Of a stretch of DNA of 64,000 bases, positions 6,112-39,849 are shown one piece after another. Positions within the stretch are counted from its first letter, which is position 1, and the number at the start of each line of letters is the position of its first letter. The stretch is from Pecten maximus (taxonomy: Eukaryota), in contig NC_047026.1 of assembly GCF_902652985.1 (NCBI RefSeq), positions 13,020,001-13,084,000 of the forward strand. Reading direction: 5' to 3'. The notes beneath the pieces are model-generated. The model was not told the DNA's origin and made no database searches. It saw only the letters and a list, made by a program, of their open reading frames with translations. The position numbers and the translations under genes are program-made.

Positions 6112-9100
6112 ATGAAGTACTACACAGGAAGCTATTTATTTCCTTTTCAATGGGACCAAGTTGCTACTGCATACTGGCAGAAATATTCCTTACACAAAAG
6201 GTATATTACACAAATCACATTTTTTTAATATGTATAATTTTCACTTTTTATATGGTGTCCTTGTTGTGTAATTGTGAATTTTTTCTATCCTGATAATGTA
6301 TTCACATGACGGGTCTTTTTATTAGTCTAGTAAATATTTCAGCATATTTCTCTATTTATTAAAAAAAATCATCAGTTCATAAAAGAAGATATAATGAAAA
6401 AATGACTGGGGATGCAACTACATGTATTACCCTTGGACATTGATCCAAAGTGGTGTCAGGGTGTGTATTTGGTGTATTCAGTAGTATACTGGATATACAC
6501 CGGTGGATCGCGATCACTTTCACTACGATACCAATATCGATCCCAAGGCAATTTTACGATACCTATATTGATCCTGTGTCTTGCTCTTATTGTTTATTTG
6601 TTTAATACATAAATGCATAAATGCATTTTCTTCGGAAAGACTTGAATTCAAATTAAATGACAATTGTCGAAAACGAAAGTGTTATCGATTTCCGGGAAAC
6701 CGGAGCGCTACTCTGAAAGTGAAAGCAGTTAAATGATTGGTTGAGGCCAGCTGCAGTAGGCCAATCAGAAAGCGTTTGACAAATACTCGTTCACAACAAA
6801 CCAAACATCATGGCGAACAACTGGATAACTATGGTTTCTCTATGTATTGCGATATGTATCGGATCATAGCACTAGTATCATGATACGTATCTGATCGGGG
6901 CATCACTGTATTGTCCCAGCCCTACTAACCAGGCTATTGGTGATTTTTTTTTTTTGCCGTTTCTATAGGCTATGATAGGTGGGTCTGGGGAAAATGTCAG
7001 GTAGGATAGTAGCAATAATTTGCTGATAAGTTTTGATCTGTTTCGCAAGCCTGGGGGCACGGTGGTCAGTTGTGAGTACGAGTAGTAAGCCCTTGGTAGG
7101 TAGTCTAGGTTTAGGTCTTAGAAGGCCGAGGCTCTCTCTGACATGTGCTAGGTGGAAGGCCTGACTAAGTACCGTGGATGGGTATTCCTGATGGTGGTGA
7201 GCTTTGACAAGTGGGATCGAATGTCTGAGGAAATCTGATTCAAGTGTGCATAATCTGCGTAGCCTGAGAAATTGGCCACATGGTCCTGCTCGTTTGCAGT
7301 GGGATGGGTGATGGGAAGAGTAATGCAGGTAGTTGTGTTTATCAGTGGTGTTGAGGCCTTACTGAATGGAGTATTCCATTGTGAATTTAATGCTGTGATA
7401 GAATTCAAAGTTGTTGCAGTGATTGTAGAATGCTTCAAGTTGGGCGAGGGTTCCCGTCCAAATCATATATTGGTGTGGTGCTGTTTTCAGCATTTTATCA
7501 TATGTTCAAGATCACCCATAAAGATATTGGCAAATGAGAAGGCCACTTTGGTACCCATACTAGTTCCTCCTGTTTGTAAATTTTTTGTTGTTAAACTTAA
7601 AGTTGTTACAGTATAAGACGAGTTTTAGTAGTTCTAGTATGCTGATTAGAGAGGGTGTATATAGGTTTATGCATGGTGACATTGGTGAGCGCTTGTACTA
7701 CAGCTTGGAGACCTTCATGGTTAGGTATATTGGTGTACAATGATGTCACGTCATTGGTGACCATGATGAAGCCCCTAGGTTAGGGGTGAACTTTTTCAAT
7801 TTTCACACTTTCCTTACTCTCAGTCATTTTTCATAAAAGAAGATATCTTTTACATTTAAAGTTTTGATTGACATAAAAGATACCTCTATTTCTGCTAACA
7901 TGACCAGCCCTTATGTTTTCATACTCACCCAGAATTTTGTTTGCAAAAGATATTTTACTGTTAATAAGTCAACTATTCTTTCTATATGTCTATAACTGTA
8001 ATAGCGAAATCTTTAAAGCTAGTTTTATATGGTGTTTTTTTTTCTCTTGAGTTAGTTATTTTTGAAAAGTTACAAAAATTACAAGTTTGTGTGACCTGTT
8101 TCTACCACAATAGATGTTTTGAGAATGGATTGACCTGTATATCAAATGAGGTTTAAGGATATTGCCTAAAGTGAAATGCCGCTCATGAATATGCAAAAGT
8201 AACAATTCCGGAAATATGTGGGAATTTTACCATTTGTTGCAAATCAGAACAAACAATTTTTGCCAGAATATGAATTGTATAAATTATCGTTTCAGTAAAC
8301 ACATAATTTCGGAGGATGTGCTGTCCCGCCAGATTATTGAAGGGAAACTTTTCACAAAGAGACTGATCAATAAGTCAGTTAACTACGCAGAGAAGGTTGT
8401 GAACAGACTGACACGTAACAGAGACAAGAAGACATGGGTTATAGAGGAATCCATTGTGGACCCAGTAACGAAAACTATGATCACCTACACACGAAACATT
8501 GGTCACAGGGATTTAGCTGTAAGTATAGCACAGTACAGTCTACCCTCTTTATATCGCCACATTTCGTCCACGACAGTTATGGCGGTATAACGAGGGTGGC
8601 GATAGTATCGAATTATGGAAATTACAACCATGGAATGGATAAGGAGTTTTCATTTTCAACGTTAACCAGATAATCTCGCCGTAACAACATTAACACGATT
8701 TACAGTATACTGTACATGTACATAATGTAGATTCGTTAGTCAATTATTCTAAGTCACAAATTTCTGGAAATAGTCATTGATCTGCTTTTGCCGCATGCCA
8801 TCCTTTATTATCTGTCGAAATTTATGCGAAAGTATTCGGCAGTGGCTTTTCCACCTAGACTGATGAAGCCAAACGTTCATACCATACACTATAGGAAAAC
8901 AAAGTAAGTATAAATCAGCCATGCTATTATTCCAAACCAAACCATAAGTTTCGGTGGATGTGACATGATAAAAACAACATCCTAATATCGATCTACCTCA
9001 GCGATAGAAAATCGTAAAAGCGTAGAGCTGTGTCACTTGTACAATTTGCAAGTGAAAACAGGAAATGTCCTATGTCTATAAATAGAACACTAAAGAGTTC

Positions 9101-11377: not shown

Positions 11378-14300
11378 TACTGCTGTAAATTGATGTGTGG
11401 ATGATTTGGATAGATATGTTAATGGGACGTGGCTGGTGATGAATATTTGGAAGCTGAAATAGTTTTTAAACTTAAATCATTTTCATTGTTTTTATAAACT
11501 TGAGAGATTTATTTGTGTTATTAAAGCCAAAGAGCTAGGCCAAGCAGTGATATTTTCTAAACATGATTGCAGATGAAATTTGTTAAATTGAAGACAAATT
11601 ATTATCTGAAATTTATCCAAAAAAGATATTTCGGAAGAATTTTTTTTTCAAGAATATTAATTTTTATGATTTATACATCAGAGATCAGAAAAGCTCTGTT
11701 TACTTAAAATAAGTAAAATAGGCTGTCTTTCTTTTCTAGAAGACTTCAAAATAATCTGTTCTGTTTTGTTTTAATCTTGTGAAGAGTTTTTGTTTGACTT
11801 TTTTACCTAATCAACTTATATAGGGGTTACCTAACTAAATCTTTCAGTTACGATTTGATAGTGCTGTTAATGCTAATGCTAATTGTTGTCATTTTGTTTT
11901 TTTACATGAAAGCTGTTCGCTGGTTCAGTGCTAGGTTTGCTGAAAGGTCTTAGGAATAATCCATATTCCATGACCATGTCGTAACAGTGTATGCAACCAA
12001 TGTGCATGTATCTGATACTGTCCTGTATGGTTCTTGGGTTTGGACTAAATGCTAAGTCCTGTGAAACTTATATGAATATACATGTGTAACCTCATGAAAC
12101 ATTTATTAGATGGGAGTGACATTTTTGCTTATTTTTGAAATTCTTTGTGATGACGTGCATGTGTGAGAGAGAGTGATTTAATAAAAAAAAATGTTAAATC
12201 TGTATAGTTGTTAGGATGATTTCTTTAATAGTCTAGGGATTATACAGGAAATAATTTTCTGCATTGTTATATATATGTATTTATATGTCTACCTCACAAA
12301 AGGCATGGAACCTTGACAATAAATTCAGGACAATGCAAGTGAAGAAACATAGTTTTAAATGTAATTCATAGCTTTGAATGTAATTCACGTAAGTTTAACT
12401 TTCATTTTCCAGTAATGAAGCATTGTCAGTTCGTATGCTGGCTTCAGGGTGTAGATGTGCTACATGTACTCTCAATCTCTAAATGGAAGAGAGACTAAAT
12501 GTTACATTATGGTTGTTTTTTTGAGAGACCACTTCATATTATTGTCAGTTTGACCGAGGTTCTCATTCTACTGATATGCTTAGTTTGTCACAATGAATGA
12601 TAATACAGATAAAAAACTTCATTATATTTGAAAATCTTCCTTGTACATCATATACATGTATATCTAATTTCAGGTCTATTAAGTTTGGTTTGTCATATAA
12701 TGTTACACAACTTCAAAATTCAAGGGTTTGATAAGGTGCAGAGATCATAAGTAAACGCAACCCTGGGAATTTCAAAGATGTGTTCAACAGGGCTTTATTG
12801 AGCCAAAGTATATAATTTCATCCAAATAAAATCTTCTAATATATACATATGTACCTACCATATCAAACCTGATTTATGCTAATTTCCATTTATATGGCCA
12901 TCTGTTTTTTGGGTTTTTTTTTTTTTGCATTCCATATACATGTACATGTATTTATATTCTTTGCAAAAATGCCACCATTATTGCACATTAATGAGATTTT
13001 GTGAACAGTTTTGATTTCTGATTTCCCTCAAGTTGTTGACCACCTATGCTTGTTATGTTAAATCTGGTATTGTAGTTCTATATTATATAACTCATTAATG
13101 ATAGATAACTTATAAGTTTGTCACAAAATGTCATCTTCATTTGAAATGTATCCTTTAAGAGGTTGAGGGCCAACATTAGGACAATCCGGTAAGATTCTAA
13201 CCCAACATAATCGTTAAGTATCGCGATGCATGAACAGTGTATAGGGAACACATGGTTTTGATAGTGGCTACATTACACATAACAGCTGTCTTCAGCAGAT
13301 TTTTGGAAACTCAACAAGCCGAACCTGTACATTCCTACACTACTGAAAAATATAAAAGCAAATCTCCAGTTCTTGGGTTTCAGAGTAGTGAAATAGCACA
13401 CTGCCAATGAAGATTTTTTGTGTTCTATCAAAGGAAAAGAATAAGAATGTGTATATCCTCAGAACCAAAGCCCCTGTTTTAGTGTGAATCAGAGAGAGAT
13501 TGATTGTGATTGTTTTGATAACTGACCTTATTGTCACTATTAGATTAGTACATGTATGAGATTTGCCCCTAGGGATTGCTTTATGTTATTTGAGTTATGA
13601 GTTATGTTTTCTGTAAATAATCTTCAGAGAATTGTATGATTTGTATTAGATTATTACATGAACACTTAGGAATAACAAATTACAGAGGTCGACCCAGGAA
13701 TTTTCCAAGGATTCGACAACTGTAACTTTAGGATTTGTGGCATGTATTCAACATGTGTATAGTGTCAAAATACATATAAAGCAATGTTACTACTTTAAGT
13801 TAAGAAGGAAGATAGGGATGGGGAAACCTCTGCACGCTCCTCCTGGATTTTTCATTGAGCTTACTGCAGTAGGCACCACAGTATTTCTTGCTAGGTACCT
13901 GGTAGCCTTTTTTTCCATTTCATTAAGAATCTACGTAGATCATGAATTAGGATTTATCGACCGTTATTGCAGCTTCATTTCACATCCTATGGAAATAATG
14001 AACACTTGTTAATGTAAGAAAATTGCCAGGTAATCGACAATGAGAAGAAAACATTGATAGCATTTTACCTATTCAAGTTGTAAACATGTGAGTGTATGAT
14101 ATACTTTATATGTGTGAGAAGATGTTTTAGTGCTTGTAGTTGACTGATGTCATTGTCAAACTTGACTGTTATAAACATGGATTTATAAATAAAAAATATT
14201 TACAAAGAAACAATTGTGCAGTTTGTACTCATAAGTCCCCTACCTACACACAATGATAGAGGACCATGATATCTCCGACAAGTTACAGTTTCAGTGTTTT

Positions 14301-14460
14301 GGGGTGAAGTTCAAGGTCACTGTTACTATTTTTATCGTGGGGCTGGTAGAGGGCATGTATTGCTTTATCAATACTCTGTATGTTTGTTTTGACAGAAAGT
14401 ATGACATGGTTTCATACAGATATAAAAAATCCTTGCATTTCAACATTTTCATGAGAGAGT

Positions 14461-14897
14461 CTTAGAATGTCAATGTACATGTTCCAAGTAATGCCATGAA
14501 AATCTTAGGATTCAATGTACATGTACCCGGTAATGCCTTGAAAATCTTAGGATTCAATATACATGTTCAAGGTAACGCCTTGAAAATCTTAGGATTCAAT
14601 GTACATGTTCAAGGTAACGCCTTGAAAATCTTAGAATTCAATGTACATGTACCTGGTAATGCCTTGAAAATCTTAGAATTCAATGTACATATACCTGGTA
14701 ACGCCTTGAAAATCATAGAATTCAATGTACATGTACCCGGTAATGCCTTGAAAATCTTAGAATTCAGTGTACATGTTCCGGTAATGCCTTGAAAATCTTA
14801 GAATTCAATGTACATATACCAGGTAATGCCTTGAAAATCTTAGAATTCAATGTACATGTACCCGGTAATGCCTTGAAAATCTTAGGATTCAGTGTCA
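14461..14897. repeat. 42-bp tandem repeat, about 10 copies
   Basis: Unit AAAATCTTAG(A/G)ATTCAATGTACATGT..GGTAATGCCTTG. It creates the spurious 14-aa repeat ORF at 14496-14792. Confidence 0.95.
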
Positions 14898-15455
14898 TGC
14901 CGGGAAAGTCTCCAAATCAAGTGTCATTCTTTGAAAAGTCTAAAAAGTTGGCACAGAGGCTTTGAAACTTTCTTGAATTTCTGTCTTAGATTATCATGGT
15001 AAAATAAAACTCTTTGACTTTGAGATGCCATGGTAAATTACATTTCTCTACATTCTGCAAGATTTATCATTAAAAAAAAACTGTTGATGTGACTTGTGAT
15101 CAAGTTTCTAACATGATACAAAACAATCTCGCCTAAAGTCAATCACTCTTGCTGAAAAATCTTGGGAATTTGACAATTCCGTATAAAGTATGAACCCATA
15201 GGCTGCTATAAACTTTTTGATTGAATTGGAATATTGTAATGATATCGCTCGTTTGTTGGCTGAGCTGTATCATCATTACTGAACAATAACTAATATTAAG
15301 TTCAAACTCAAACTTGCTTGCTTGGACTTCCTTTCAGGGTCAAAAGGTTAAGGTCACTGTCATTGAATAGAAAATTAATTTCTGCATAACTCAAATTTAA
15401 TTGACCAATCAAGCTCAAATTTAACAAACTGCTTCCTTCTTGGGAGTGTTTGCTT

Positions 15456-15546
15456 CACAGGTACTTGTGGACATGATTATGGTGTTTTTAATTTAAATGT
15501 TACATTTAAATTAAAAACACCATAATCATGTCCACAAGTACCTGTG
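15456..15546. mobile_element. 91-bp perfect palindromic mini-transposon with an 8-bp TSD (P/hAT-type)
   Basis: 45-bp arms 15456-15500 and 15502-15546 are exact reverse complements. Direct repeat GTTTGCTT at 15448-15455 and 15547-15554. Termini CA...TG. Confidence 0.88.
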
Positions 15547-16766
15547 GTTTGCTTGGGATTTAGACTTTCTTCCCGAGCAGACTCCAGGCAATCTTCCATT
15601 TTCAATTCAAAATTTCTAAAATTAAACAAAATATTTCTTGCGTCATAATTCAATTATGTCTGCCTCCGGAGGAAGTTCAAATATAGAACGAATATTCATA
15701 CCCTGCCTACACTGCTCTGTCAGAAATTGTCCCAGTCGTGCAGAGCTACGTTATCGCAGCTAGTTCAAATACTGTAGTCACATTTGTTGATTTGTCAGTA
15801 CAAAGGTTAAACTTTTGAAGACAGAAATCCTGCGGCTACCATACGGCCTTTGAATTGATGCCACATGGTGAGCTATATAGGGCGGCCGTAAGGCAGTCGA
15901 AAGGAAACCGCAAGGCGTCCACAGGGAAGGGAGAGGCAAATATGGCGTCGGACCATGTGACCAGTCTGACTGGTATACACAACGTAACGCCACCGTAAGG
16001 TTACCGTGGAACCGCTCTTCGACTACGGTGTGCCAATTGCTACGACAACCGTAGAAATGATAACTCTATGTTGTAGTTCTATAGCGACCCTGTAGGGCAT
16101 GCAAAACCCCCGTAAGGTGACCCTGCGCCTGCCGCAAGTTTCTCTCGATTTTAGCTAGAGCTTCTGCCTCTGTATTCCAGCCGTAGAGCATGCTGGAAAA
16201 GTTTTGCCAATTTAAACAATATATAAACCGTACTCAACTAGGAGTCACTTGTCTTAAATAAAATTATGCCTGGTAAGACCACGGAATGATAAAAAAAATA
16301 CTGCATTTGTCTTTTTGTGTTTTATCTGGACTACAATTTCCTTTTCTTATAATACAAATGTACATTGTATTATACCATTACAGCTTGTTCAAGAATGATG
16401 CCACTTTCCTCAATTATATTGTAAACAAGTAATCTATATTTTTGATTATGTTTTTATCTGCTGCAGTGCCATAACGATGAATCAGTACAATCTCCTAGGC
16501 ACACAGTAGTATTTTGTTTTCCCAAGATTACATATGGATACATAAAAAAAAACAATTGTAACCTATAGTTAAGCTGATTAGTAGTATGTCTTGTTCCTCC
16601 TTATCAGGAATTCGTTATCGATTTCATTTGTCCAGAGTTTTACAATGTGGTGTTTGGAACCTTGTGATATGGTTTGTGGTGACCTTGCAGAGATAACACC
16701 AAGATCGACACGTGTTTCCAGTAGATCTGACATTCTAGATATCGGTCAACAAAAAACATACTAAAG

Positions 16767-18338
16767 ATGTTAAAGAAACCAGACATGGGACTGAAGAGGC
16801 AATTGTCACGTAGAGTCTCTGTTATTTCTGGGACCCGCCCTTTCCGGGTACTGGGACGATTTGCGGGCGTGGTCACAGTCGCGGCGATCGGATTTCTATG
16901 TGGTCATTTGATATATCACCTTTTCGTCACGCCCAATCACGTGGTTACAGATTCTGGTGAGTTTGTCAAACGAGGCTCCAGTAAACGCGGGTTTCATGAC
17001 GGAAGGCATGAAGACATATCATTTAAAGGTGTACCGGAAGCGGAAGTGACTTCCTCTACACAAAAGGTGCCACATGTAAAGACTAATGTCCACATGCCAC
17101 CTCGGGAGAGGGACGGGGTAGAAATAAAAAAGGACATGAGTGTTCAATTTCGTGACTATATTCCCAGAAAGGTGTTTGTGAATTGTGGAGGAACATTTCC
17201 TATGACTTTGGACTTATTCCTCAACACATATCCCGACGCCTACAAGTTCGACCTGTACACGTTTTTACCGGACGAGTCATATGCTCTCTTTTATCAGATA
17301 TACAAGAGACATACTCTATACACACCGACCATAGTCTCTACACAAAACTTGTCCATCGAATCTACCAACAATGGCTTTGCTAGCATGGTCGAGCAAAGGG
17401 ACACCATGGACACCGTAGATCTGCCCAGCTGGCTTCTTGCAAACCTTCACCAAGATGATTACGTCATACTCAAGCTAGACAGCAAATTCGAAAAGGACAT
17501 TGTGAAAAGTATTGGTTTAAAAAACGCCATTGAGTGGATTGACAAATTTTACACAACTTCAATTGATAACGCCACCATTGCCGTTTATCGCGATGAACTT
17601 GGAAAATTCAACAAAAATGTGTCGATTTGGGATAATGCAGCGCAGACCTATTCCGACTTTGATATCGTCAATTCGCCTGGTATTCCACAGGGTCTAGGCG
17701 CCGTGATGTCACAGTGTGTAGAACCTGCGGATTCCGAAAAGTTTGGATTGTTTCTTTTCTCAGAGTATTTCACAAAAACTGTCAATCAAACTCTTAACAT
17801 GTTGATCATGTACGCTGGTGAACGGAAGGTGGGCGTGTCCTTATTTCTACCACGTGATTTCTATCGCTCAATATCTAGTCGAACATTGCGAGAACTATCC
17901 GAGATTGTTACACTTGGACTGTTTATTGGCAACGAAAATCAGGCTCACACGGGAACAAACAGAAGTGAAGACATCTCTGAATTTAATAGATATAGAAATA
18001 TATATGCTGAAGCTGCTAGCCAAGTTCAACATCATACGGACTCTATTCTTCAACACGTCATGGTTTCAACGACGATAGACCCGGGTATTTGTCAAAAAAT
18101 TACCCAGTCTCGACACGTGACAGTTTTTAATGAAACCAAACATATTACTCACCATACACAAACTATCTTACATACTGGCATTCTAACGATGGATATGATT
18201 GGACGAAATCGTGGAGAAATCCTCGCCGTTGATTTGACGAGAGACAATACAGATATATTGACTCTCTACATGACTAAACGATTTGAACCATGGTTAATTC
18301 CAGCTTCTAAATGTCAGTCTTTGACTAATGCGAATTAA
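16767..18338 (+). CDS. Uncharacterised 523-aa type II membrane protein: degenerate FkbM-like methyltransferase domain plus degenerate CE4/NodB polysaccharide deacetylase-like domain
   Basis: Uninterrupted 1572-nt ORF. Basic N-terminal tail, one hydrophobic segment (aa ~32-54), a stem, then RKVFVNCGG, DLPSWLLANLHQDDYVILKLD, and GAVMSQC..FGLFL..VSLFL..GEILAVD..PASKC. Several N-x-S/T sequons. A probable 5'UTR intron at 16273-16607. The ORF is secure; the domain calls are from motif recall. Confidence 0.8.
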   Translation: MLKKPDMGLKRQLSRRVSVISGTRPFRVLGRFAGVVTVAAIGFLCGHLIYHLFVTPNHVVTDSGEFVKRGSSKRGFHDGRHEDISFKGVPEAEVTSSTQKVPHVKTNVHMPPRERDGVEIKKDMSVQFRDYIPRKVFVNCGGTFPMTLDLFLNTYPDAYKFDLYTFLPDESYALFYQIYKRHTLYTPTIVSTQNLSIESTNNGFASMVEQRDTMDTVDLPSWLLANLHQDDYVILKLDSKFEKDIVKSIGLKNAIEWIDKFYTTSIDNATIAVYRDELGKFNKNVSIWDNAAQTYSDFDIVNSPGIPQGLGAVMSQCVEPADSEKFGLFLFSEYFTKTVNQTLNMLIMYAGERKVGVSLFLPRDFYRSISSRTLRELSEIVTLGLFIGNENQAHTGTNRSEDISEFNRYRNIYAEAASQVQHHTDSILQHVMVSTTIDPGICQKITQSRHVTVFNETKHITHHTQTILHTGILTMDMIGRNRGEILAVDLTRDNTDILTLYMTKRFEPWLIPASKCQSLTNAN

Positions 18339-19391
18339 AGCTATAGCTGTAGTCTACACAGCGGTATTGTTGGGTACTTGAACCATTGTTGGCACCGTCT
18401 CCTAAATGTCAAAACTAAACATTTGTATGTAACTCGGACATTATTCGAGGCACGGAATAACAAGTCCATGAGTTTCCAGTCTGTTTGATGATGCTCGCCG
18501 TTAACTAACCAGTTGTTTTAGCGGAAAAGCATTTGACACTTTTTAATTTTAACCTGCATGCCAATTTGAATAGTTGTACTAGTTTAGAATATGTCTACTT
18601 TTTATATGCTTTTAATTTTCAATAATATAATAAGCGTGCATTGGTAATTGGAAAATCACTGTACATAAACACATCACGGTTAAAAAAAATAAAAGATTTT
18701 CTATTAATTTTACAGATGAATCACTGTACATAAAAATTATAATAAATGAAAAAAAATGTTCATTTTAAATAAGACATTAAATACAAATGTAAAGCATTTT
18801 CTTGTTAGTAATCATAAGTTTGCATATCAATTACAGTTAGTTAAAAAAATCCCTCTAATGACAACTTAACATATACTTATAATCACTTTACTTTAAAATA
18901 CACAAAAGAATATAGTTAACTATTTCATTGAACAGGCTTATGTCGGTATTGATGATCTCACACAATTGTACATAATAAAAATAATATTCAGTCATATGCT
19001 TACTGCTAACACTATATCATTAGTAGACTGGCCACCAGCCCTGAAGTTCCCTGCTAAGAATTACTCAGCTTAATTATAAAACTAGATTATCTCCCTCTAG
19101 TTTGAAACTAAGAATCAGACGCAGCTAGAGACAAAAATCATAAAGCTCAATCTTATTTATAGTTTTAATATTCTAGAGACAGGGGGCCAACCTACATTAG
19201 AGATACATCCCTACTAGCATGGCTCTTCATGTGTGATGTAGTTATATGCATATTACCTGTTTTAAAGTCACTAAGATCATGTAGTATGAATTGCTTGTTT
19301 TTACTATAGTTAATATCAAACATACTCATGAATATATTCACGTTTGCACCTCAAATAATTCCATTTGTTAACAGTTTGTTCCTAATCATTA

Positions 19392-21051
19392 CTTTAAACT
19401 TTAAACATATTTTATTGCCAAAATAGAGACAAAGGATTAGGCACAAGTTTTGTCAACTTATTGACGCCCTCTCCCATCACACAAATACATTACATGAACA
19501 AATTTAGATACTTAGCAGGCATAAACATATATAATATTTAACATAGACACAGGCTCGTAAGAATACACATTATTAAATGCTGGATTTGATGTAGTTTTGC
19601 ACATGTCGGAACACAAGAGAGTTTAGGTCTACAGAGAGATCTGAATTTCCAAACAGGAGAAGTTTTAAATCCAAAACCAAACATAAGGCATTTAAAGTTT
19701 GAAATATATATAATCTTTCCAATTCAAATTGCAATTTGCAGTCAAAGAAAAAGTGAAAGGCATTTTCGCAACGATGTCCACAGGTGCAAAACGGATCATT
19801 AATAAGATTTACTTGATACAGATTATATTTGAGAACACTATATTTGTGCCTCAATCTAGTATGTAAAATGTTTAACTTTCTTTCACCATAACTGTAGTAG
19901 GTAGGTGGTGATTGTTGTACATTTGAGATTATAGAGGTTTTGAACAAATTCAGGGAAGGCAACGATCATACAGATAGATCCTACAAGTTCCAGCTTCGAA
20001 TAGTGGAAGGTATAAACCAGAGATTTGTTAGAGAAAGCCCGAAAGGAGGAACTCGATAATCACTGTTATTTCTAAGAGCATATCGGTTATTTTCTGCAAA
20101 AGTAGGTGGAAGGAGATCAGTTAAATAGTCCGGAGATAGCTTATTATGCATTTTATATAAAAGTTGGAGGTTTTTACGTTTTCGACGATTTGAAAGAGTA
20201 TCTAAACCAGTTTCAAAAAGTAGATCCGTGCATACGAAGGAAGGCCTGTTATGATACGGGCAGTTTCTCTTGAGCTTTCTCTAACAATTCAGTTTCAATT
20301 TAGTACAACCATCCCATACTTCACACGCATATTCTAAAACTGGCAAAATAAATGATTTATATATTTTTAAAAGACTATTTCAATTTAGCAAAAAATTCAA
20401 TCTTCTTAGTACATTTATATTCTTCAAAACAGAACCGTATATGGCATTTATATGTAAATCAAAAACAAAAGTGGACCAAGAATGGAACCTTGAGGAACCC
20501 CTGCTAAATTCAAACCTAAATGTGAATAAGAATTGTTTAAAAATACTTTTTGGCGCCTGTCAATTAAATAGTTTTCTAGCCAGGTATACACTTCACCACA
20601 AATTCAAAAAGATTTTAGCTTTATCATTAAACCTTTATGTAACAAACGAACAAAGGCCTTTGAAATATGACAGAAAACCATACATATAATTATGTTTTCC
20701 AGGGAAATACAAATGTTGTGATAAATTTCTACCAGCTGATATACAGTGGAATGGGCATGCATAAAACCAAATTGGTATTTGTAAAGCAATAAGTTTTTGA
20801 CAAAATAATTACACAAATGTTTGTAAATACACGTTCAAAAACTTTGCCAACAGTAGATAAAATAGAAATCGGTCTATAATTTGAAGGCGAATGCATGACT
20901 TTAGCTACTTTCCGAGTGGTTGGGAAAATACCTGTTGCCAATGACATATCAAACATAATTTCAAGTGGAAAACAAAGAGTTTGTGATGTATTTCTTAACA
21001 TATGGTGACTGATTCCATCCTCACAGAGGCATTATCGAGCTTCAGTATCTG
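19392..21051 (-). mobile_element. 5'-truncated, internally deleted LINE (CR1/L2 group) with a 9-bp TSD
   Basis: RT motifs PSNYRPISILSTVGKVFER, QFGF..HSTVYQL and ISKAF. C-terminal CTCGHRCENAFHFFFDC. 3' tail AATAAAATATGTTTAAAGTTTAAAG. Direct repeat TAATCATTA at 19383-19391 and 21052-21060. Confidence 0.92.
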
Positions 21052-27400: not shown

Positions 27401-30400
27401 GATTCAATTGCATGGATTTACTATTTCTCTTTAGATTCAGTCGTTGATTACCAAGAAATGTTTCTCGATTTGACATGAGGAATTATTGGGTTACCATATA
27501 CAGTTTATGGTGATGTAGGAAACTCTTCCACTTTTGGAACATCTCTTGTCTCCCCTTTTTTGGCGTTCATTTCACATCTTTTTTCGGCATAGCCGTTTAA
27601 TTTTCTTTTGGCCCCGGATATGACGCGACAGGTGGCGTTACTGGTCAAGATGAAGTATGTGATTGGTCAATGTAGCGGTAACTGCAAAATGCAGATATCC
27701 AGTTAAAAACGAAACAAAGCTAAGATTGAATGTAAGCTGAATAAGTAGATTATCTTTTTAAATGACACATTAATAAAATCATATTCCTGATTCAAATGCA
27801 GCCTTGTTATTACCAAAAATGATTCAAACTGATAAGATACAATTTTGTTATTCGTGCTAAACCATCAGTTTTACAATATAACCACCAGCATTAAAACTAT
27901 GCCGTTCATCTTTTTTAAAGATATTTCTTGTTCTTGTTATATCTATTAATATTTCTATTGTTATCATTGTTATTGTTGTTTTTGTTTCTTTGTATTGCCT
28001 TTAAGATTCCATATGAATTGACAGTTTGATCGACGTCTTTAATCTTTTTCGACAATTATCCGTTTTTCTGTTTTATCAAGGTCTGTTAAAAGAGGGAGAA
28101 AATCGAATGCTGCCACCTAGCGGCAAAGACAACTGTATACAGAGGACTTCAGATGACGTGTGTATGACAGCAGGTAAACTGTCGACCATAAACGTGACGT
28201 ACAATGACGTGCACAGTATGCTACATATACTAAATCCCCCCCGTTTCGGGCCCCAACTTTCTGAAAATTCCTTCCAAATACTGTCGAGATATGCCGTTGA
28301 TGTAGCATGCAATGAAAAATCACTCATGGGGCCACGAAACATGTTCGTTTTAGACATGTTATACAGTATAGATAACTTGAGGGGATTGACAATACATCTA
28401 TTTATATATATATAAATTTTTACGAAAAGAGCAGAGTCCCGCGGGTTTCCGACTAAGACCAAAATTGTCACACTTTCAATGTCATATCAAACATTTTCTT
28501 CCAAATGTATAATTGATATTTCTACGGTTACACTTTGTTTTCTAATTTCTGCTGTAGCAATTTAGTAGTCTTTAAGCAGTTTTAAAAAGTATGATCGATT
28601 GAAACAAGAAGTCAAACTTCATAATTTACACTATTACCACTCTCTGAGATTTTTATCTTCAAAATTTGAAATTAGGTGTAATCCACCTCTCTATTTGGTA
28701 ACTTCCGGTCTTATAATAAATTATTTTAGGAAGCTGTTGTATTAAACATTTATCTGTGTTGATTAAATATTTTCTTTGCTGTCTTTACAGGTGATGACCG
28801 TCCTAATGTTGTACCTTCGTTAGGAGCCATACACACTTTATTCATGAGGGAACACAATAGGATAGCCGCCATGCTCGGCGTCCTGAATCGTTTCTGGGAC
28901 GACGAGAGGATTTACCAAGAAACACGCCGAATTATGTCTGCACTGATACAACATATCACATACTTCGAATACTTACCTTTAATTCTAGGTAAGCGGATTA
29001 TGGAGTACTATGACATTCTACCAAACATTGAATCCTTGGAGGCAAGCGTCTATAATACGTCAACCAATGCCGGAATAGCTAATGTCTTTGCCGTGGCAGC
29101 GTTTAGATTTGGTCATTCGCAGATTCCTTCTATTCAAACGTTTATTGGACCAAGAGAATCCTACCGGCGTGACTTTCGGATTGAGAGTACGTATCACAGA
29201 CCATACTTTGCACAATTCAATAACGGACAAGGTGCAGAGGATGTGTTGAGATGGCTAGTCAAAGACTCACAGCCGGAAACAAACAGGTACCTATTGTTTC
29301 TGAAAATGTCTTCGCACTAGATTCATTGTCTGAAAATTCCTAGTTTTGAAAAATACAATATTCATAATAGATTAACGTACGTGTATTCAATCCTATTATC
29401 TCGCTAACGTCCCCTTTGTTAAATTTCCTTAACGATATCACATTGACGTTTTATGTCATTTTTATGAATAAGTATATTTTTTAGTTTGGTTATATTTTCA
29501 TTACCCTAATCTCACTTTGAGAGCTCACATTGCGGTGTTTTCGAAGTGATGAGAGGAACTTTCGGAACACCTGTTCAAACAAGTGTTTAATTGTTAACTT
29601 TATCAATTTTTGAAGTTTTGTTCCTATATTTTGAATTGAAATAACGGTTTTTGTTTACATTTGCAGTCAGTAGTGAAATTATCCGTACTATCAATATTTT
29701 CATCATTTTACTTGAATGACGTTCATAGATTGTGCAAATCCGATAAACAATTACCTTTGTGACATCGACATCACACTTGAAGTTCAGCGCAATACATGGA
29801 TTGCTACCTCTATATGACTGGATAACAAACTTATTTTTCTCACAGAGTTTTTGTTCGAGGCGTACGGGATCAGTTATTCCTAAGGAACAACGTCAGCCTC
29901 GATCTGGCAGCTATCAATATTCAGAGGAGTCGTGACCATGGCGTGGCGCCATACAATTCGTGGCGAAAGTGGTGTGGCCTGGATAGCGTCCGGCATTTCG
30001 GGGTTGGACAGGATGGGCTGGTTCACCATGACCCAGATACAGCCAGACTACTTCAACGGGCTTACCGGTACATATCTACTACATACAGAAAGCATAATTG
30101 TTTCTCTGATGGCGGGTTGTTTGTTTGTTTGGTATATCACCCTGTGAACAGCAAGGGTCATTTTGAGGCTGGGTCTCCTTATAGTAGTTGGTGACTACCT
30201 CACTGAACAACATACGGGATGCCCATCGGGTACCAATCAAAGTAGTTAGGATTAAGTGTCTTGCCCAAGGACACAACCACGGCAGTACAGACTGGTCCGT
30301 TTCTCAGCTTCCCGAGAAAAACAAAAACCGACACAGGTAGTAAGCGTCGAACCACGTACCTCGGATCTTCACCTGAGGTTATGTGGCTGGTCCTCTAACC

Positions 30401-38274: not shown

Positions 38275-39849
38275 CTAATCATGTCCAACGCTGTAGTACT
38301 GGAGACGTTTCACGACGTCACCAAACACCGCCCAAAGGACCAGGTTTTTGTCCAGGCAGATGGCCTGTGTACTCCGCTCGTCTGTAAATAAGGTCTTCAT
38401 GAACTCTCCGTTAGGGTTGATGAGAAGCACGCTGTGGTTGTTACAGTCGGCAATGAGAAGATTTCCAACACTGTCGAAGGTCACATCCCATGGGTCAAAT
38501 GCGGCGTTTACCGCCTGTTGAACTGCTTTCGTATCACTTTTGTATCTGAACATCTCTTCAAACTTTTTGTCCATGACAATAACTTGCTTTTTACTATTCT
38601 CGTCATAGCTCTGCCTTTCAACAACAGCCACGTTCTTTGTCAACCGACACTCTGTTATCTTCTGTGGTAAACGGACCAAGGCTTGTCCAGACGTCGGCGT
38701 TTTCGTGCTGAGGAGCACTTTCCCCTGTTCGGTGAATCTGGTCACTTTTTGTGACATTCCCACCAAGATTTCGTTCCCTGTAGTAACACACAGACAGATG
38801 GGTTTGTTTTTGCAGTGGAATCGCAGATTAGGAGTTCCTTGTATACATTCCATGACAGTGGAATCGGCGTCAGAGCACACCCAAACATTCTTTGTTATGG
38901 GTGATATGCTAATATCTGTTATTCTTACGTTGAACTGGATCTCCGTCCGTACCTTGCCTTTCTTGTTAAGGAGTTGTAGGATATCCGAGTATGAAATCCA
39001 AACTTCCTCGCTGCCAGTTGGACTTATCCTGTTGCCAATCCTTTCGGTATGGAATTTGCCCATGATGCTGGTTTGGGGTAGGAGGGTGAACTTCACGGGG
39101 AGTCTATTGGTTGGCATCGCTCCTGAGGTTGAACTCCCAGAAGCCGATTCCACCATCGGTGATGGAAGCTCCGTTGTAGATCTTGATTGGCTCTCCGACA
39201 GGTCATTAGTCGTCAACATCCCTAACGCTTGCTCTAGGTAACAACGGTATTGTGAAGGTGCTTCAAAGATGGCTGTATGTAGTCCAGGGGTGGCGGGTAA
39301 GTTCAAAGCTAGGCTACGGAATGCATGCCCGACGTCACAAAGCTCAATAACAGACGCCTCTTGAAGTCGTGTTTTGCATTCGTGTAGCTGTTTAGCGAGT
39401 CCTTCCTGGCTGTCTTTCAGACATTTTTTGTAGTCAGTAAGGCGCTGGACGTTTTCAGCTTTCATTTTTTGACACAATGAGGTCGATCTTTTTATCGATT
39501 CATCGATTTCGTTCTTTAATTTCACTCCTCGTTCTTGAACTGTTGTCTCCATTTTATCAAAGTAGTCTGAGGTTTCCGCGATTTCCTTGTCAATTGAGTC
39601 TTTGTTTTCATTTATATGTGGAAGCTTGATATTTTCAATTTCTTTTATGAATGTGATCATTTCTGATTTCTTTTGCTCAGCTATTTCACTCAATTCGGTC
39701 AACTCGTGTCCCCTGTGGCGGGAACCTACACATTTCTTACAGGCGAGTTCGTTGCATTTTTCACAAATGAATTCCACAGCTTTTCCAACATGGTGAATAC
39801 ACGTGCCCTGTCCCTTCTTACGAACAGCTGTCTGCACTGCGGCGGCCAT
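38275..39849 (-). CDS. RING-less TRIM-like protein (B-box, coiled coil, NHL-like beta-propeller), 524 aa
   Basis: Single coding exon. B-box CIHH..FICEKCNELACKKCVGSRHRGH, a heptad-rich coiled coil, an S/T linker, and NHL-type repeats such as FDPWDVTFDSVGNLLIADCNNHSVLLINPNG. Splice acceptor just upstream of the ATG (~39911) and a candidate non-coding exon-1 donor at ~45506. Confidence 0.92.
   Translation of the reverse strand: MAAAVQTAVRKKGQGTCIHHVGKAVEFICEKCNELACKKCVGSRHRGHELTELSEIAEQKKSEMITFIKEIENIKLPHINENKDSIDKEIAETSDYFDKMETTVQERGVKLKNEIDESIKRSTSLCQKMKAENVQRLTDYKKCLKDSQEGLAKQLHECKTRLQEASVIELCDVGHAFRSLALNLPATPGLHTAIFEAPSQYRCYLEQALGMLTTNDLSESQSRSTTELPSPMVESASGSSTSGAMPTNRLPVKFTLLPQTSIMGKFHTERIGNRISPTGSEEVWISYSDILQLLNKKGKVRTEIQFNVRITDISISPITKNVWVCSDADSTVMECIQGTPNLRFHCKNKPICLCVTTGNEILVGMSQKVTRFTEQGKVLLSTKTPTSGQALVRLPQKITECRLTKNVAVVERQSYDENSKKQVIVMDKKFEEMFRYKSDTKAVQQAVNAAFDPWDVTFDSVGNLLIADCNNHSVLLINPNGEFMKTLFTDERSTQAICLDKNLVLWAVFGDVVKRLQYYSVGHD

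What the first reader, a model, noticed from the sequence alone, without database searches (positions are those of the whole stretch)
16767..18338. Type II membrane protein fusing an FkbM-like methyltransferase fold to a fungal-type CE4 (chitin deacetylase/NodB) fold
Seen: a 523-aa ORF with no coding introns and Golgi-enzyme topology (basic cytosolic tail, TM at aa ~32-54, polar stem to aa ~130, N-glycosylation sequons). Recalled family patterns: aa ~134-290 follow FkbM/Methyltransf_21 order (RKVFVNCGG for VFIDCGAN; DLYTFLPD for IYAFEPN; DLPSWLL..DDYVILKLD for DFSxWL..DYVILKMDIEG; WIDKFY for IDELF). Residues ~311-516 follow fungal CE4 chitin deacetylases (GAVMSQCVEP..FGLFL for GxxIxxCTxP..VALTFDD; QTLNML..VGVSLFL for LLDxL..KATFF; GEILAVD for GxIxLxHD; terminal PASKC for VTVxEC, so the N- and C-terminal Cys pair is kept). 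Inference: a lumenal two-domain glycan-modifying or glycan-recognising module. Molluscs make O-methylated glycans and chitinous matrices, and to my knowledge the glycan O-methyltransferases are poorly identified. I do not recognise this architecture as a described animal family.
Basis: partly seen in the sequence, partly recalled or inferred. Interest (0 to 1): 0.85.

Follow-up and report, generated by a model that had tools for sequence, protein, structure and literature searches.

The report
Scallop FkbM-like/CE4-like membrane pseudoenzyme
A real, expressed scallop gene encodes a membrane-anchored protein built from a methyltransferase-like fold and a chitin-deacetylase-like fold. It belongs to an undescribed animal family, and the mollusc branch has lost the catalytic signature residues of both folds, so it probably binds or regulates rather than catalyses.

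Summary
Window 16767-18338 (+) is an intronless 523-aa ORF, covered colinearly by RNA-library contigs. It has a basic N-terminal tail, one TM helix (aa ~32-54), a disordered stem and six lumenal sequons.

- aa 132-305 is homologous to FkbM/PF05050 proteins (hhalign 99.8%, E 3e-28).
- aa 309-520 models as a CE4/NodB barrel (VIA Z 15.2; Foldseek probability 1.0). An invariant Cys317/Cys516 pair sits where fungal chitin deacetylases have their N-to-C disulfide.

The architecture is not mollusc-only. Uncharacterised proteins of starfish, crinoids, acorn worm and amphioxus share both domains (hhalign 99.96%, E 3e-39).

Those deuterostome proteins keep the FkbM signatures. All 25 mollusc members have lost them, after a long stem branch. 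Neither branch has the CE4 Asp-His-His triad or the catalytic Asp and His.

The glycan O-methyltransferase idea is therefore weakened for this gene. The best reading is a conserved non-catalytic "double pseudoenzyme" that binds or regulates. Function remains inferred.

Another first-reader note on this same stretch (s1-802864) proposed the same reading. At least 17 canonical FkbM genes elsewhere in the genome are better methyltransferase candidates.

The parts
16727..16766 (+). Minimal 5' UTR. A possible splice acceptor (ttgcag) at about 16686-16691 is unresolved.
   Evidence: An RNA-library contig starts at 16727 (record 4). Sequence read.
16767..18338 (+). Complete intronless CDS, 523 aa plus stop.
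   Evidence: Orthologues at 75% (Mizuhopecten) and 70% (Argopecten cluster) identity.
16767..16859 (+). Cytosolic tail, aa 1-31, net charge +8. It carries a mollusc-conserved basic/Ser motif (R-Q-x-S ... R-R-x-S type).
   Evidence: composition, and N-termini of 25 members; alignment.
16860..16928 (+). Single transmembrane helix / signal anchor, aa 32-54.
   Evidence: Hydropathy maximum. AF2 helix 27-54.
16929..17102 (+). Disordered, poorly conserved stem, aa 55-112.
   Evidence: pLDDT below 50. Mean pairwise identity 0.15.
17103..17159 (+). Mollusc-specific conserved juxta-domain motif, aa 113-131 (consensus R.G.SIKKD.SIQFRDY).
   Evidence: This is the most conserved segment of the protein: mean pairwise identity 0.40, and 95% to Mizuhopecten. 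It is not conserved in the deuterostome family.
17160..17681 (+). FkbM-like class I Rossmann domain plus conserved linker (W288, T-Y-S-D-F at 294-298, N302), aa 132-305. The FkbM signature residues are replaced.
   Evidence: hhalign to PF05050-bearing proteins: 99.8%, E 3e-28. VIA Z 10.4 to Dnmt2 and 8.9 to FkbM 2py6. Viral FkbM models match at probability 1.0. Motif table.
17691..18326 (+). CE4/NodB-like barrel, aa 309-520, with the invariant Cys317/Cys516 pair and no CE4 catalytic residues.
   Evidence: Foldseek CE4 hits at probability 1.0. VIA Z 15.2 to 4m1b_B and 14.9 to 2y8u_B. Conservation.
18339..18720 (+). 3' UTR, with AATAAA at 18688-18693.
   Evidence: Contigs end at 18679-18720. Signal found.

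Best explanation
The gene encodes a single-pass type II membrane glycoprotein. Its lumenal or extracellular part is an FkbM-type Rossmann domain joined by a conserved linker to a CE4/NodB-type barrel, which is probably closed by a Cys317-Cys516 disulfide.

It is the mollusc representative, single copy in this scallop, of an undescribed bilaterian family. The other known members are in echinoderms, a hemichordate and amphioxus.

In the deuterostome branch the FkbM motifs are intact. The ancestor was therefore probably a secretory-pathway SAM-dependent methyltransferase that used an already non-hydrolytic CE4-like barrel as a substrate-holding (likely carbohydrate) module.

On the stem of the mollusc branch four things were replaced: the motif-I Asp, the motif-II Glu that binds the SAM ribose, the D-x-E-G-x-E signature and the E-x-H signature. 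The protein stayed under constraint and gained a conserved cytosolic Ser/Arg motif and a conserved stem motif.

The scallop protein therefore most likely no longer methylates or deacetylates. It probably acts as a non-catalytic binder, scaffold or regulator (a 'double pseudoenzyme') in the secretory pathway or at the cell surface.

Shown: the gene, RNA-library contigs over it, topology features, both folds, family relations and the residue losses. Inferred: loss of activity, carbohydrate ligand, localisation and ancestral function.
For: Gene and expression. Polymorphisms in the RNA contigs are 10 synonymous and 10 nonsynonymous, pN/pS about 0.29.

Folds: AF2 model pLDDT 80.7, both domains above 90. 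CE4 hits. FkbM homology. The Atlas nearest cluster is PF05050-bearing, and its structure neighbours include PF01522 and FkbM clusters.

Family: hhalign of mollusc against deuterostome alignments gives 99.96%, E 3e-39 over 354 columns spanning both domains. The starfish member also models as CE4, TM 0.79-0.81 normalised to the target. Taxa are named. The gene is single copy in its own genome.

Residue loss:
- motif-I D becomes N in 21/25 (D in 3, T in 1);
- the beta2-end E is never acidic, 25/25;
- the E-G of the D-x-E-G-x-E signature is deleted;
- E-x-H becomes T-T in most, and no member keeps E or H.
The glycine loop itself is degenerate in 7/25 members that otherwise stay conserved. The deuterostome and short FkbM families keep all of these.

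Role of motifs I and II in SAM binding: PMC1282579.

The mollusc clade has 99% support and a stem branch of 1.24, against 0.20 for the deuterostome clade.

CE4 domain: no column has His in more than 10/25 members, and there is no conserved D-D. The catalytic set required by CE4 is described in PMC8488497.

Precedent: the CE4 pseudoenzyme BA3943 is among the top structural hits.
Against: Loss of activity is inferred from sequence only. Pseudoenzymes can relocate catalytic residues.

The glycine-rich loop (N-C-G-G-T-x-P) is kept in 18/25 members.

The N-domain is the better conserved of the two (36% against 24% mean pairwise identity). It has invariant polar residues (D169, D259/K260, Y262, S296/D297) that could form a remodelled site.

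No residue-level structural superposition on CE4 or FkbM was available. CE4 motif slots were assigned from secondary-structure order and family conservation.

No ligand, localisation or tissue information was obtained.

The RNA runs are Logan contigs from two studies. One is metatranscriptomic and the other is only guessed to be RNA.
Confidence: 0.6

Rival explanations
1. It is an active secretory-pathway O-methyltransferase (for example of glycans) with a rewired SAM and acceptor site. The CE4-like barrel holds the carbohydrate acceptor.
For: The Rossmann fold is modelled with confidence. The glycine loop is kept in 18/25 members. The N-domain is the most constrained globular part, with invariant D169, D259/K260, Y262 and D297. 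Sister proteins in deuterostomes look catalytically intact. Type II topology and sequons fit a Golgi enzyme.
Against: All four FkbM signature positions are replaced in 25/25 mollusc members, including the ribose-binding acidic residue of motif II (PMC1282579). Seven members also lack the glycine loop yet remain conserved. There is no PF05050 hit even at E 10. The stem branch is long. The genome has at least 17 canonical FkbM matches that could do this job.
Confidence: 0.2
2. It is an active de-N- or de-O-acetylase that uses the CE4-like barrel, and the FkbM-like domain is an accessory.
For: CE4 fold with Z 15. D/N489 and D/E496 are conserved near the end of the last barrel strand. R410/N411 and Q/E429 are also conserved.
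Against: There is no conserved His anywhere in the domain (maximum 10/25 in any column). There is no D-D after strand 1 and no H-x-x-x-H after strand 3, in either the mollusc or the deuterostome family. PF01522 does not hit, and neither does profile-profile comparison with bona fide CE4 sequences. The catalytic set is described in PMC8488497.
Confidence: 0.04
3. It is a decaying or non-functional gene (for example a retrocopy) whose ORF and transcripts are incidental.
For: The CDS is intronless and catalytic motifs are lost.
Against: The full-length ORF is conserved in bivalves and gastropods. Identity to Mizuhopecten is 75% overall, 95% in the stem motif and 83% in the N-domain. pN/pS is about 0.29. 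Invariant Cys, Trp and Asp residues are kept. It is single copy.
Confidence: 0.02

Closest known systems
Uncharacterised deuterostome proteins: Patiria miniata LOC119745168 ('Methyltransferase FkbM domain-containing protein'), Ptychodera flava XP_070580598, Antedon, Anneissia and Branchiostoma proteins
   Same: Same architecture: N-terminal TM, FkbM-type domain, conserved W...Y-x-D-F linker, CE4-like barrel, and the Cys pair with a terminal Cys. Homologous over both domains. The starfish C-domain models as CE4.
   Different: They keep D-C-G-A-N, S-F-E, D-V-E-G-A-E-Y and G-E-Y-H, and they pass the PF05050 cut-off. They have short tails, no SIKKD...FRDY stem motif, and a Trp/Gly-rich insert (W-x-P ... 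W-G-G-G) between strands that molluscs lack. None is characterised.
FkbM family methyltransferases (Pfam PF05050; structure 2PY6; many phage and giant-virus members)
   Same: Class I Rossmann fold, same order of elements, and significant profile homology.
   Different: The scallop protein gets no PF05050 hit. All four signature motifs are replaced. It is membrane-anchored and fused to a CE4-like domain.
Fungal CE4 chitin deacetylases (A. nidulans 2Y8U, A. niger 7BLY, C. lindemuthianum 2IW0)
   Same: Compact NodB barrel: Z 14.9, 191 aligned residues. The N- and C-terminal Cys pair has similar spacing to the C36-C226 disulfide described for AngCDA and its relatives (PMC8488497).
   Different: About 10% identity and no detectable sequence homology. 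The Asp-His-His triad, catalytic Asp and catalytic His are not conserved.
BA3943 of Bacillus anthracis, a CE4-family pseudoenzyme (PDB 7BKF, 6HM9)
   Same: CE4 fold without a working catalytic set. It is a top structural match.
   Different: It is a bacterial protein with a different domain context and no FkbM domain. Its loss of residues is partial and has been reverted experimentally, according to the PDB titles.
Plant DUF7870 (PF25276) / FkbM proteins
   Same: Weak sub-threshold PF25276 match at aa 203-262 (E 4e-4). It is an FkbM-related domain in eukaryotic proteins of about 500 aa.
   Different: The plant proteins pair it with Methyltransf_11, not with a CE4-like barrel. The match is below the gathering score.

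Membership tests
FkbM / Methyltransf_21 (PF05050) | Class I Rossmann methyltransferase fold | tested here: met
   VIA Z 10.4 (Dnmt2) and 8.9 (FkbM 2py6) over aa 132-303. Viral FkbM models match at probability 1.0.
FkbM / Methyltransf_21 (PF05050) | Match to the Pfam model above the gathering score | tested here: not met
   No PF05050 hit at E up to 10; only PF25276 at 21 bits, below its 27-bit cut-off. Homology is shown only by profile-profile comparison with PF05050-bearing proteins (99.8%).
FkbM / Methyltransf_21 (PF05050) | Signature residues: motif-I D-x-G, beta2-end acidic residue, D-x-E-G-x-E, E-x-H | tested here: not met
   The query has N139, L167, a deleted E-G, and T-T. The signature residues are missing from all 25 mollusc members except the motif-I Asp, kept by 3. 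They are kept in 11 deuterostome and 16 short FkbM proteins, with single exceptions.
FkbM / Methyltransf_21 (PF05050) | SAM binding and methyl transfer | not testable with these tools
   Needs biochemistry.
CE4 / NodB polysaccharide deacetylases (PF01522) | Distorted (beta/alpha) NodB barrel | tested here: met
   Foldseek E 2.6e-6, probability 1.0. VIA Z 15.2, rmsd 3.5 over 188 residues.
CE4 / NodB polysaccharide deacetylases (PF01522) | Sequence or profile match to the family | tested here: not met
   No PF01522 hit. PDB profile search empty. hhalign against 21 bona fide CE4 proteins gives probability 0.1%; for the deuterostome family, 0.4%.
CE4 / NodB polysaccharide deacetylases (PF01522) | Asp-His-His metal triad, catalytic Asp (motif 1) and catalytic His (motif 5) | tested here: not met
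   No C-domain column has His in more than 10/25 members, and there is no conserved D-D. The motif slots hold other residues in both families. Slots were assigned from strand order, not from a residue-level superposition.
CE4 / NodB polysaccharide deacetylases (PF01522) | Fungal-type disulfide tethering the N- and C-termini | tested here: inconclusive
   C317 (24/25) and C516 (25/25) are conserved, also in deuterostomes, with spacing like C36-C226 of AngCDA.
Bilaterian TM-FkbM-CE4-like family (defined here) | Homology over both domains, plus signal anchor and terminal Cys | tested here: met
   hhalign 99.96%, E 3e-39 over 354 columns. Joint alignment. Tree.
Golgi type II glycan-modifying enzymes | Short cytosolic tail, signal anchor, stem, lumenal catalytic domain; Golgi residence | tested here: inconclusive
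   The topology features are present. The 31-aa tail is conserved, which is unusual for this class. Localisation is not testable here.

The most novel reading that the evidence does not exclude
This gene and its deuterostome relatives define an unrecognised bilaterian family of secretory-pathway FkbM-type proteins that carry a dead CE4 barrel as a carbohydrate-holding module. The motif-intact deuterostome members would be glycan O-methyltransferases, an activity known in invertebrates for which I know of no assigned enzyme. The mollusc members would have been converted into non-catalytic receptors or regulators: a lectin-like ectodomain coupled to a conserved cytosolic tail that could be phospho-regulated.
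Probability: 0.15. Interest if true: 0.75.

Novelty: new variant of a known kind. Interest (0 to 1): 0.5.

Why it matters
Two well-known microbial-type folds, FkbM methyltransferase and CE4 deacetylase, turn out to be fused in a conserved animal membrane protein family. None of its members found here has an informative name, and I found no paper on the fusion.

The family offers a natural enzyme/pseudoenzyme contrast. Deuterostome members keep the methyltransferase signatures, and mollusc members lost them once, early, and stayed conserved.

This makes several questions directly testable:
- Which animal proteins O-methylate glycans? Candidates are the intact deuterostome members and the many canonical scallop FkbM genes.
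- What can a dead CE4 barrel do?
- How does a lumenal enzyme become a binder or regulator?

For this particular gene the practical message is cautionary: it should not be annotated as a methyltransferase or as a chitin deacetylase.

Tried and rejected
Searches that gave nothing:
- Sequence-level detection of CE4 failed by Pfam at E up to 10, PDB phmmer and profile searches, and hhalign against a 21-sequence CE4 alignment built from the scallop's own chitin deacetylases and their relatives. The CE4 link rests on structure only.
- A PDB profile search with short FkbM proteins found nothing.
- NCBIfam gave nothing.
- The profile version of the search for homologous proteins added no new members.
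- Literature searches for DUF7870, FkbM with glycan/Golgi, FkbM with mollusc, FkbM structures, and FkbM with polysaccharide deacetylase found no description of this family or fusion. Two papers only mention FkbM-domain genes in passing.

Ideas rejected:
- The other long ORF in the window (38275-39849, minus strand) is not a paralogue. It is a B-box/NHL TRIM-like protein.
- No second two-domain paralogue exists in the genome. Only the window gene matches both parts of the deuterostome profile.

Not possible:
I therefore did no orthologue DNA retrieval, no dN/dS between species and no synteny analysis.
- Residue-level structural superposition was not available, because the fold tools return ranges only.
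Full report
OBSERVATION

Window 16767..18338 (+) is a 523-aa ATG-initiated ORF. It is one of only two ORFs longer than 200 aa in the 64 kb window. It lies in a local GC rise, 0.41 against about 0.33 in the flanks. The window contains no N runs.

The N-terminal 31 residues carry 9 K/R and 1 D/E. The strongest hydropathy windows start at aa 28-36. Six N-x-S/T sequons (N194, N268, N284, N340, N398, N455) all lie C-terminal of this segment.

An AlphaFold2 model built on 25 family sequences (mean pLDDT 80.7, pTM 0.72) shows four parts: a helix at 27-54, a disordered stretch at 55-124, and two compact domains at about 131-305 and 309-520 with pLDDT mostly above 90.

EXPRESSION AND GENE STRUCTURE

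Four RNA-Seq runs of one study hold about two thirds of the sampled words of the locus. Four runs of a second study, only guessed to be RNA, hold 0.20-0.42 of them.

Laid on window 14300-20200 (5901 letters, within the operators' limit), contigs of 1741 nt (16980-18720) and 1584 nt (17089-18679) are colinear with the genome and show no joints. Short contigs reach up to 16727. The flanks 15.9-16.66 kb and 18.83-19.0 kb carry nothing. An AATAAA at 18688 fits the contig ends.

The CDS is therefore intronless. RNA-library contigs cover the gene while its flanks are empty, which I read as expression. A 5' UTR intron (a possible acceptor near 16691) is not resolved.

Twenty differences in these contigs split into 10 synonymous and 10 nonsynonymous, giving pN/pS of about 0.29. 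The nonsynonymous ones fall at weakly conserved positions.

The gene is single copy in its 918-Mb genome. That genome is Pecten maximus, because a protein encoded at another of its loci is 100% identical to a P. maximus RefSeq entry.

N-DOMAIN

Pfam gives only a sub-threshold DUF7870 match (PF25276, E 4e-4, 21 bits against a 27-bit cut-off) and no PF05050 hit at E up to 10.

An exhaustive phmmer search of 1.84 billion representatives found 69 proteins. About 21 are full length. A tail of proteins matches only aa about 130-300. Those tail proteins carry PF05050 (Methyltransf_21/FkbM) above its cut-off.

A profile of the 25 full-length relatives (A1) aligns to a profile of 16 short PF05050 proteins (A2) with probability 99.8% and E 3e-28 over query aa 120-300.

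Structure agrees:
- VIA-align gives Z 10.4 to Dnmt2 and Z 8.9 to the FkbM structure 2py6 over aa 132-303.
- Several viral proteins annotated FkbM match at probability 1.0.

C-DOMAIN

No sequence method sees anything. This covers Pfam, the PDB and hhalign against a 21-sequence alignment of bona fide CE4 proteins seeded from the scallop's own chitin deacetylases.

The model, however, matches CE4 structures clearly:
- Foldseek puts CE4 esterases and deacetylases in all of ranks 1-17 at probability 1.0. They include the CE4 pseudoenzyme BA3943 and the A. nidulans and A. niger chitin deacetylases.
- An all-against-representatives VIA search gives Z 15.2 (4m1b_B, rmsd 3.5 over 188 residues) and Z 14.9 (2y8u_B, model 308-518 against chain 26-229). 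The top 20 rows are all polysaccharide deacetylases and esterases.
- The ESM Atlas structure neighbours also include PF01522 clusters.

C317 is conserved in 24/25 family members and C516 in 25/25. Fungal chitin deacetylases have a disulfide that tethers the N- and C-terminal ends (C36-C226 in AngCDA, likewise in 2IW0 and 2Y8U; PMC8488497). The spacing here, 199 residues, is similar. I could not inspect coordinates to confirm the bond.

THE FAMILY IS WIDER THAN MOLLUSCS

Every named full-length close relative is molluscan:
- bivalves: Mizuhopecten, Argopecten, Crassostrea, Potamilus and Mercenaria, plus the query species Pecten;
- gastropods: Haliotis, Gigantopelta, Batillaria.
All are labelled uncharacterised or hypothetical.

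Among the weaker hits are proteins of about 400-540 aa from Ptychodera flava, Patiria miniata, Antedon, Anneissia and three Branchiostoma species. Aligned together (A4) they show:
- an N-terminal hydrophobic anchor;
- a canonical FkbM domain;
- the same W...Y-x-D-F...P linker;
- a C-terminal domain that ends in a conserved Cys.

hhalign of A1 against A4 gives 99.96% and E 3e-39 over 354 columns, from the start of the FkbM domain to the terminal Cys.

A model of the starfish protein (pLDDT 81.3) matches CE4 structures even better than the scallop model: TM 0.79-0.81 normalised to the target, rmsd 3.0-3.6, 15-17% identity.

The TM-FkbM-CE4-like architecture is therefore a bilaterian family, not a mollusc invention. 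Searching the scallop genome with the deuterostome profile returns the window gene as the only two-part match.

CATALYTIC RESIDUES

In a joint alignment of the three groups:

| Signature | Short FkbM and deuterostome proteins | 25 mollusc proteins |
|---|---|---|
| Motif I | D-C-G-[AG] | N in 21, D in 3, T in 1 |
| End of strand 2 | S-F-E | L, I, V or Q; never acidic |
| After strand 4 | D-[IV]-E-G-x-E | E-G deleted; only the last E kept (22/25) |
| Last signature | E-x-H | T-T in most; none keeps E or H |

Seven mollusc members have also lost the glycine loop, yet remain otherwise conserved.

Motif I and the motif II acidic residue contact SAM in Rossmann methyltransferases; the latter binds the ribose hydroxyls (PMC1282579).

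D169, invariant in molluscs, is also conserved in deuterostomes. It is therefore ancestral and not a compensating change.

In a maximum-likelihood tree of the N-domain:
- the two-domain proteins form one clade (98% support);
- molluscs form one clade (99% support) on a stem of 1.24 changes per site, against 0.20 for the deuterostome clade.
This fits a single early loss followed by a new constraint.

In the C-domain no column has His in more than 10/25 mollusc members, and there is no conserved D-D. The slots where CE4 enzymes carry motif 1 (T-F-D-D), motif 2 (H-x-x-x-H) and motif 5 (L-x-H) hold other residues in both the mollusc and the deuterostome families. The motif roles are taken from PMC8488497. 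I assigned these slots from strand order and conservation, not from a residue-level superposition.

The conserved polar positions in the mollusc barrel are R410, N411, Q/E429, a D-rich column at 459 (H in scallops), T/S461, D/N489 and D/E496. These could line a binding groove.

WHAT MOLLUSCS GAINED

- The segment aa 113-131 (consensus R.G.SIKKD.SIQFRDY) is the best conserved part of the protein. Its mean pairwise identity is 0.40, against 0.36 for the N-domain and 0.24 for the C-domain, and it is 95% identical to Mizuhopecten. It has no counterpart in the deuterostome alignment.
- Many mollusc members share a basic, serine-rich cytosolic motif (R-Q-x-S-x-S, R-R-x-S) in a tail of about 30 residues. 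The deuterostome tails are short.

Both features suggest a new, non-enzymatic role. The tail could be a sorting or phosphorylation signal. That is my inference and is untested.

INTERPRETATION

Most likely (about 0.6), this is a conserved non-catalytic descendant of a secretory-pathway FkbM-type methyltransferase that carried an already dead CE4 barrel as a substrate-holding module. It would now work as a binder, scaffold or regulator.

Rivals:
- A rewired active methyltransferase (about 0.2). The glycine loop is kept in 18/25 members, and the N-domain is strongly constrained with invariant polar residues.
- An unconventional deacetylase (about 0.04).
- A dying gene (about 0.02), which the conservation contradicts.

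An independent first-reader note on the same stretch proposed a 'double pseudoenzyme' (s1-802864). My tests agree with it.

BEARING ON THE GLYCAN O-METHYLTRANSFERASE QUESTION

The scallop genome has at least 17 matches to PF05050 above its cut-off, eleven of them in open frames of 327-428 aa. The two I read are type II proteins with intact D-I-G-A-N, E-P, D-V-E-G-x-E and E-W-x-x-H motifs. These, and the intact deuterostome two-domain proteins, are better candidates than the window gene.

LIMITS

- The fold tools return no coordinates.
- The RNA evidence is from assembled contigs of coded runs, so tissue and expression level are unknown.
- Unnamed family members from transcriptome assemblies could include non-mollusc lophotrochozoans.

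Noticed in passing
L010:817-2097 (+), L012:1363-2442 (-), and loci L011, L013-L019 (own genome, contigs C8, C18, C11, C2, C1, C15, C4): At least 17 matches to canonical FkbM (PF05050) above its cut-off, eleven of them in uninterrupted open frames of 327-428 aa. The two I read are type II membrane proteins with all FkbM signature motifs intact. Two near-identical hits lie about 87 kb apart on C8. They are plausible candidates for mollusc glycan O-methyltransferases.
   Followed up: partly
window 38275-39849 (-): Intronless 524-aa ORF with a B-box zinc finger, a TRIM coiled-coil (weak) and an NHL repeat. It is a TRIM-NHL-like protein, unrelated to the finding.
   Followed up: partly
window 28844-29320 (+): ORF fragment matching animal haem peroxidase (PF03098, E 1.5e-38, profile positions 231-371). 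It is probably one exon of a peroxidase gene downstream of the finding.
   Followed up: no
window 8216-8590 (+): ORF fragment matching the PRELI-like family (PF04707, E 6e-15). It is probably an exon of the upstream neighbour gene.
   Followed up: no
window 15456-15718 and 19134-19189: Short stretches covered at high depth by many RNA-library contigs that run on into unrelated sequence (loose ends at 15684 and 19189). They look like pieces of dispersed repeats flanking the gene.
   Followed up: no
L004:1363-2475 (+) and L003:844-2061 (-) (own genome, C6): Canonical CE4 chitin-deacetylase genes in single ORFs with intact F-D-D and H-S-x-x-H motifs and a C-terminal TM. The protein search shows a large scallop expansion, with many Pecten maximus LOC entries on the same chromosome.
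   Followed up: partly
window 18377: A 7-nt deletion polymorphism in the 3' UTR in one RNA run (X1) but not in the others.
   Followed up: no
window 18141-18143 (codon 459): Scallops have His where 18 of 25 family members have Asp, in one of the few conserved polar columns of the CE4-like barrel.
   Followed up: no
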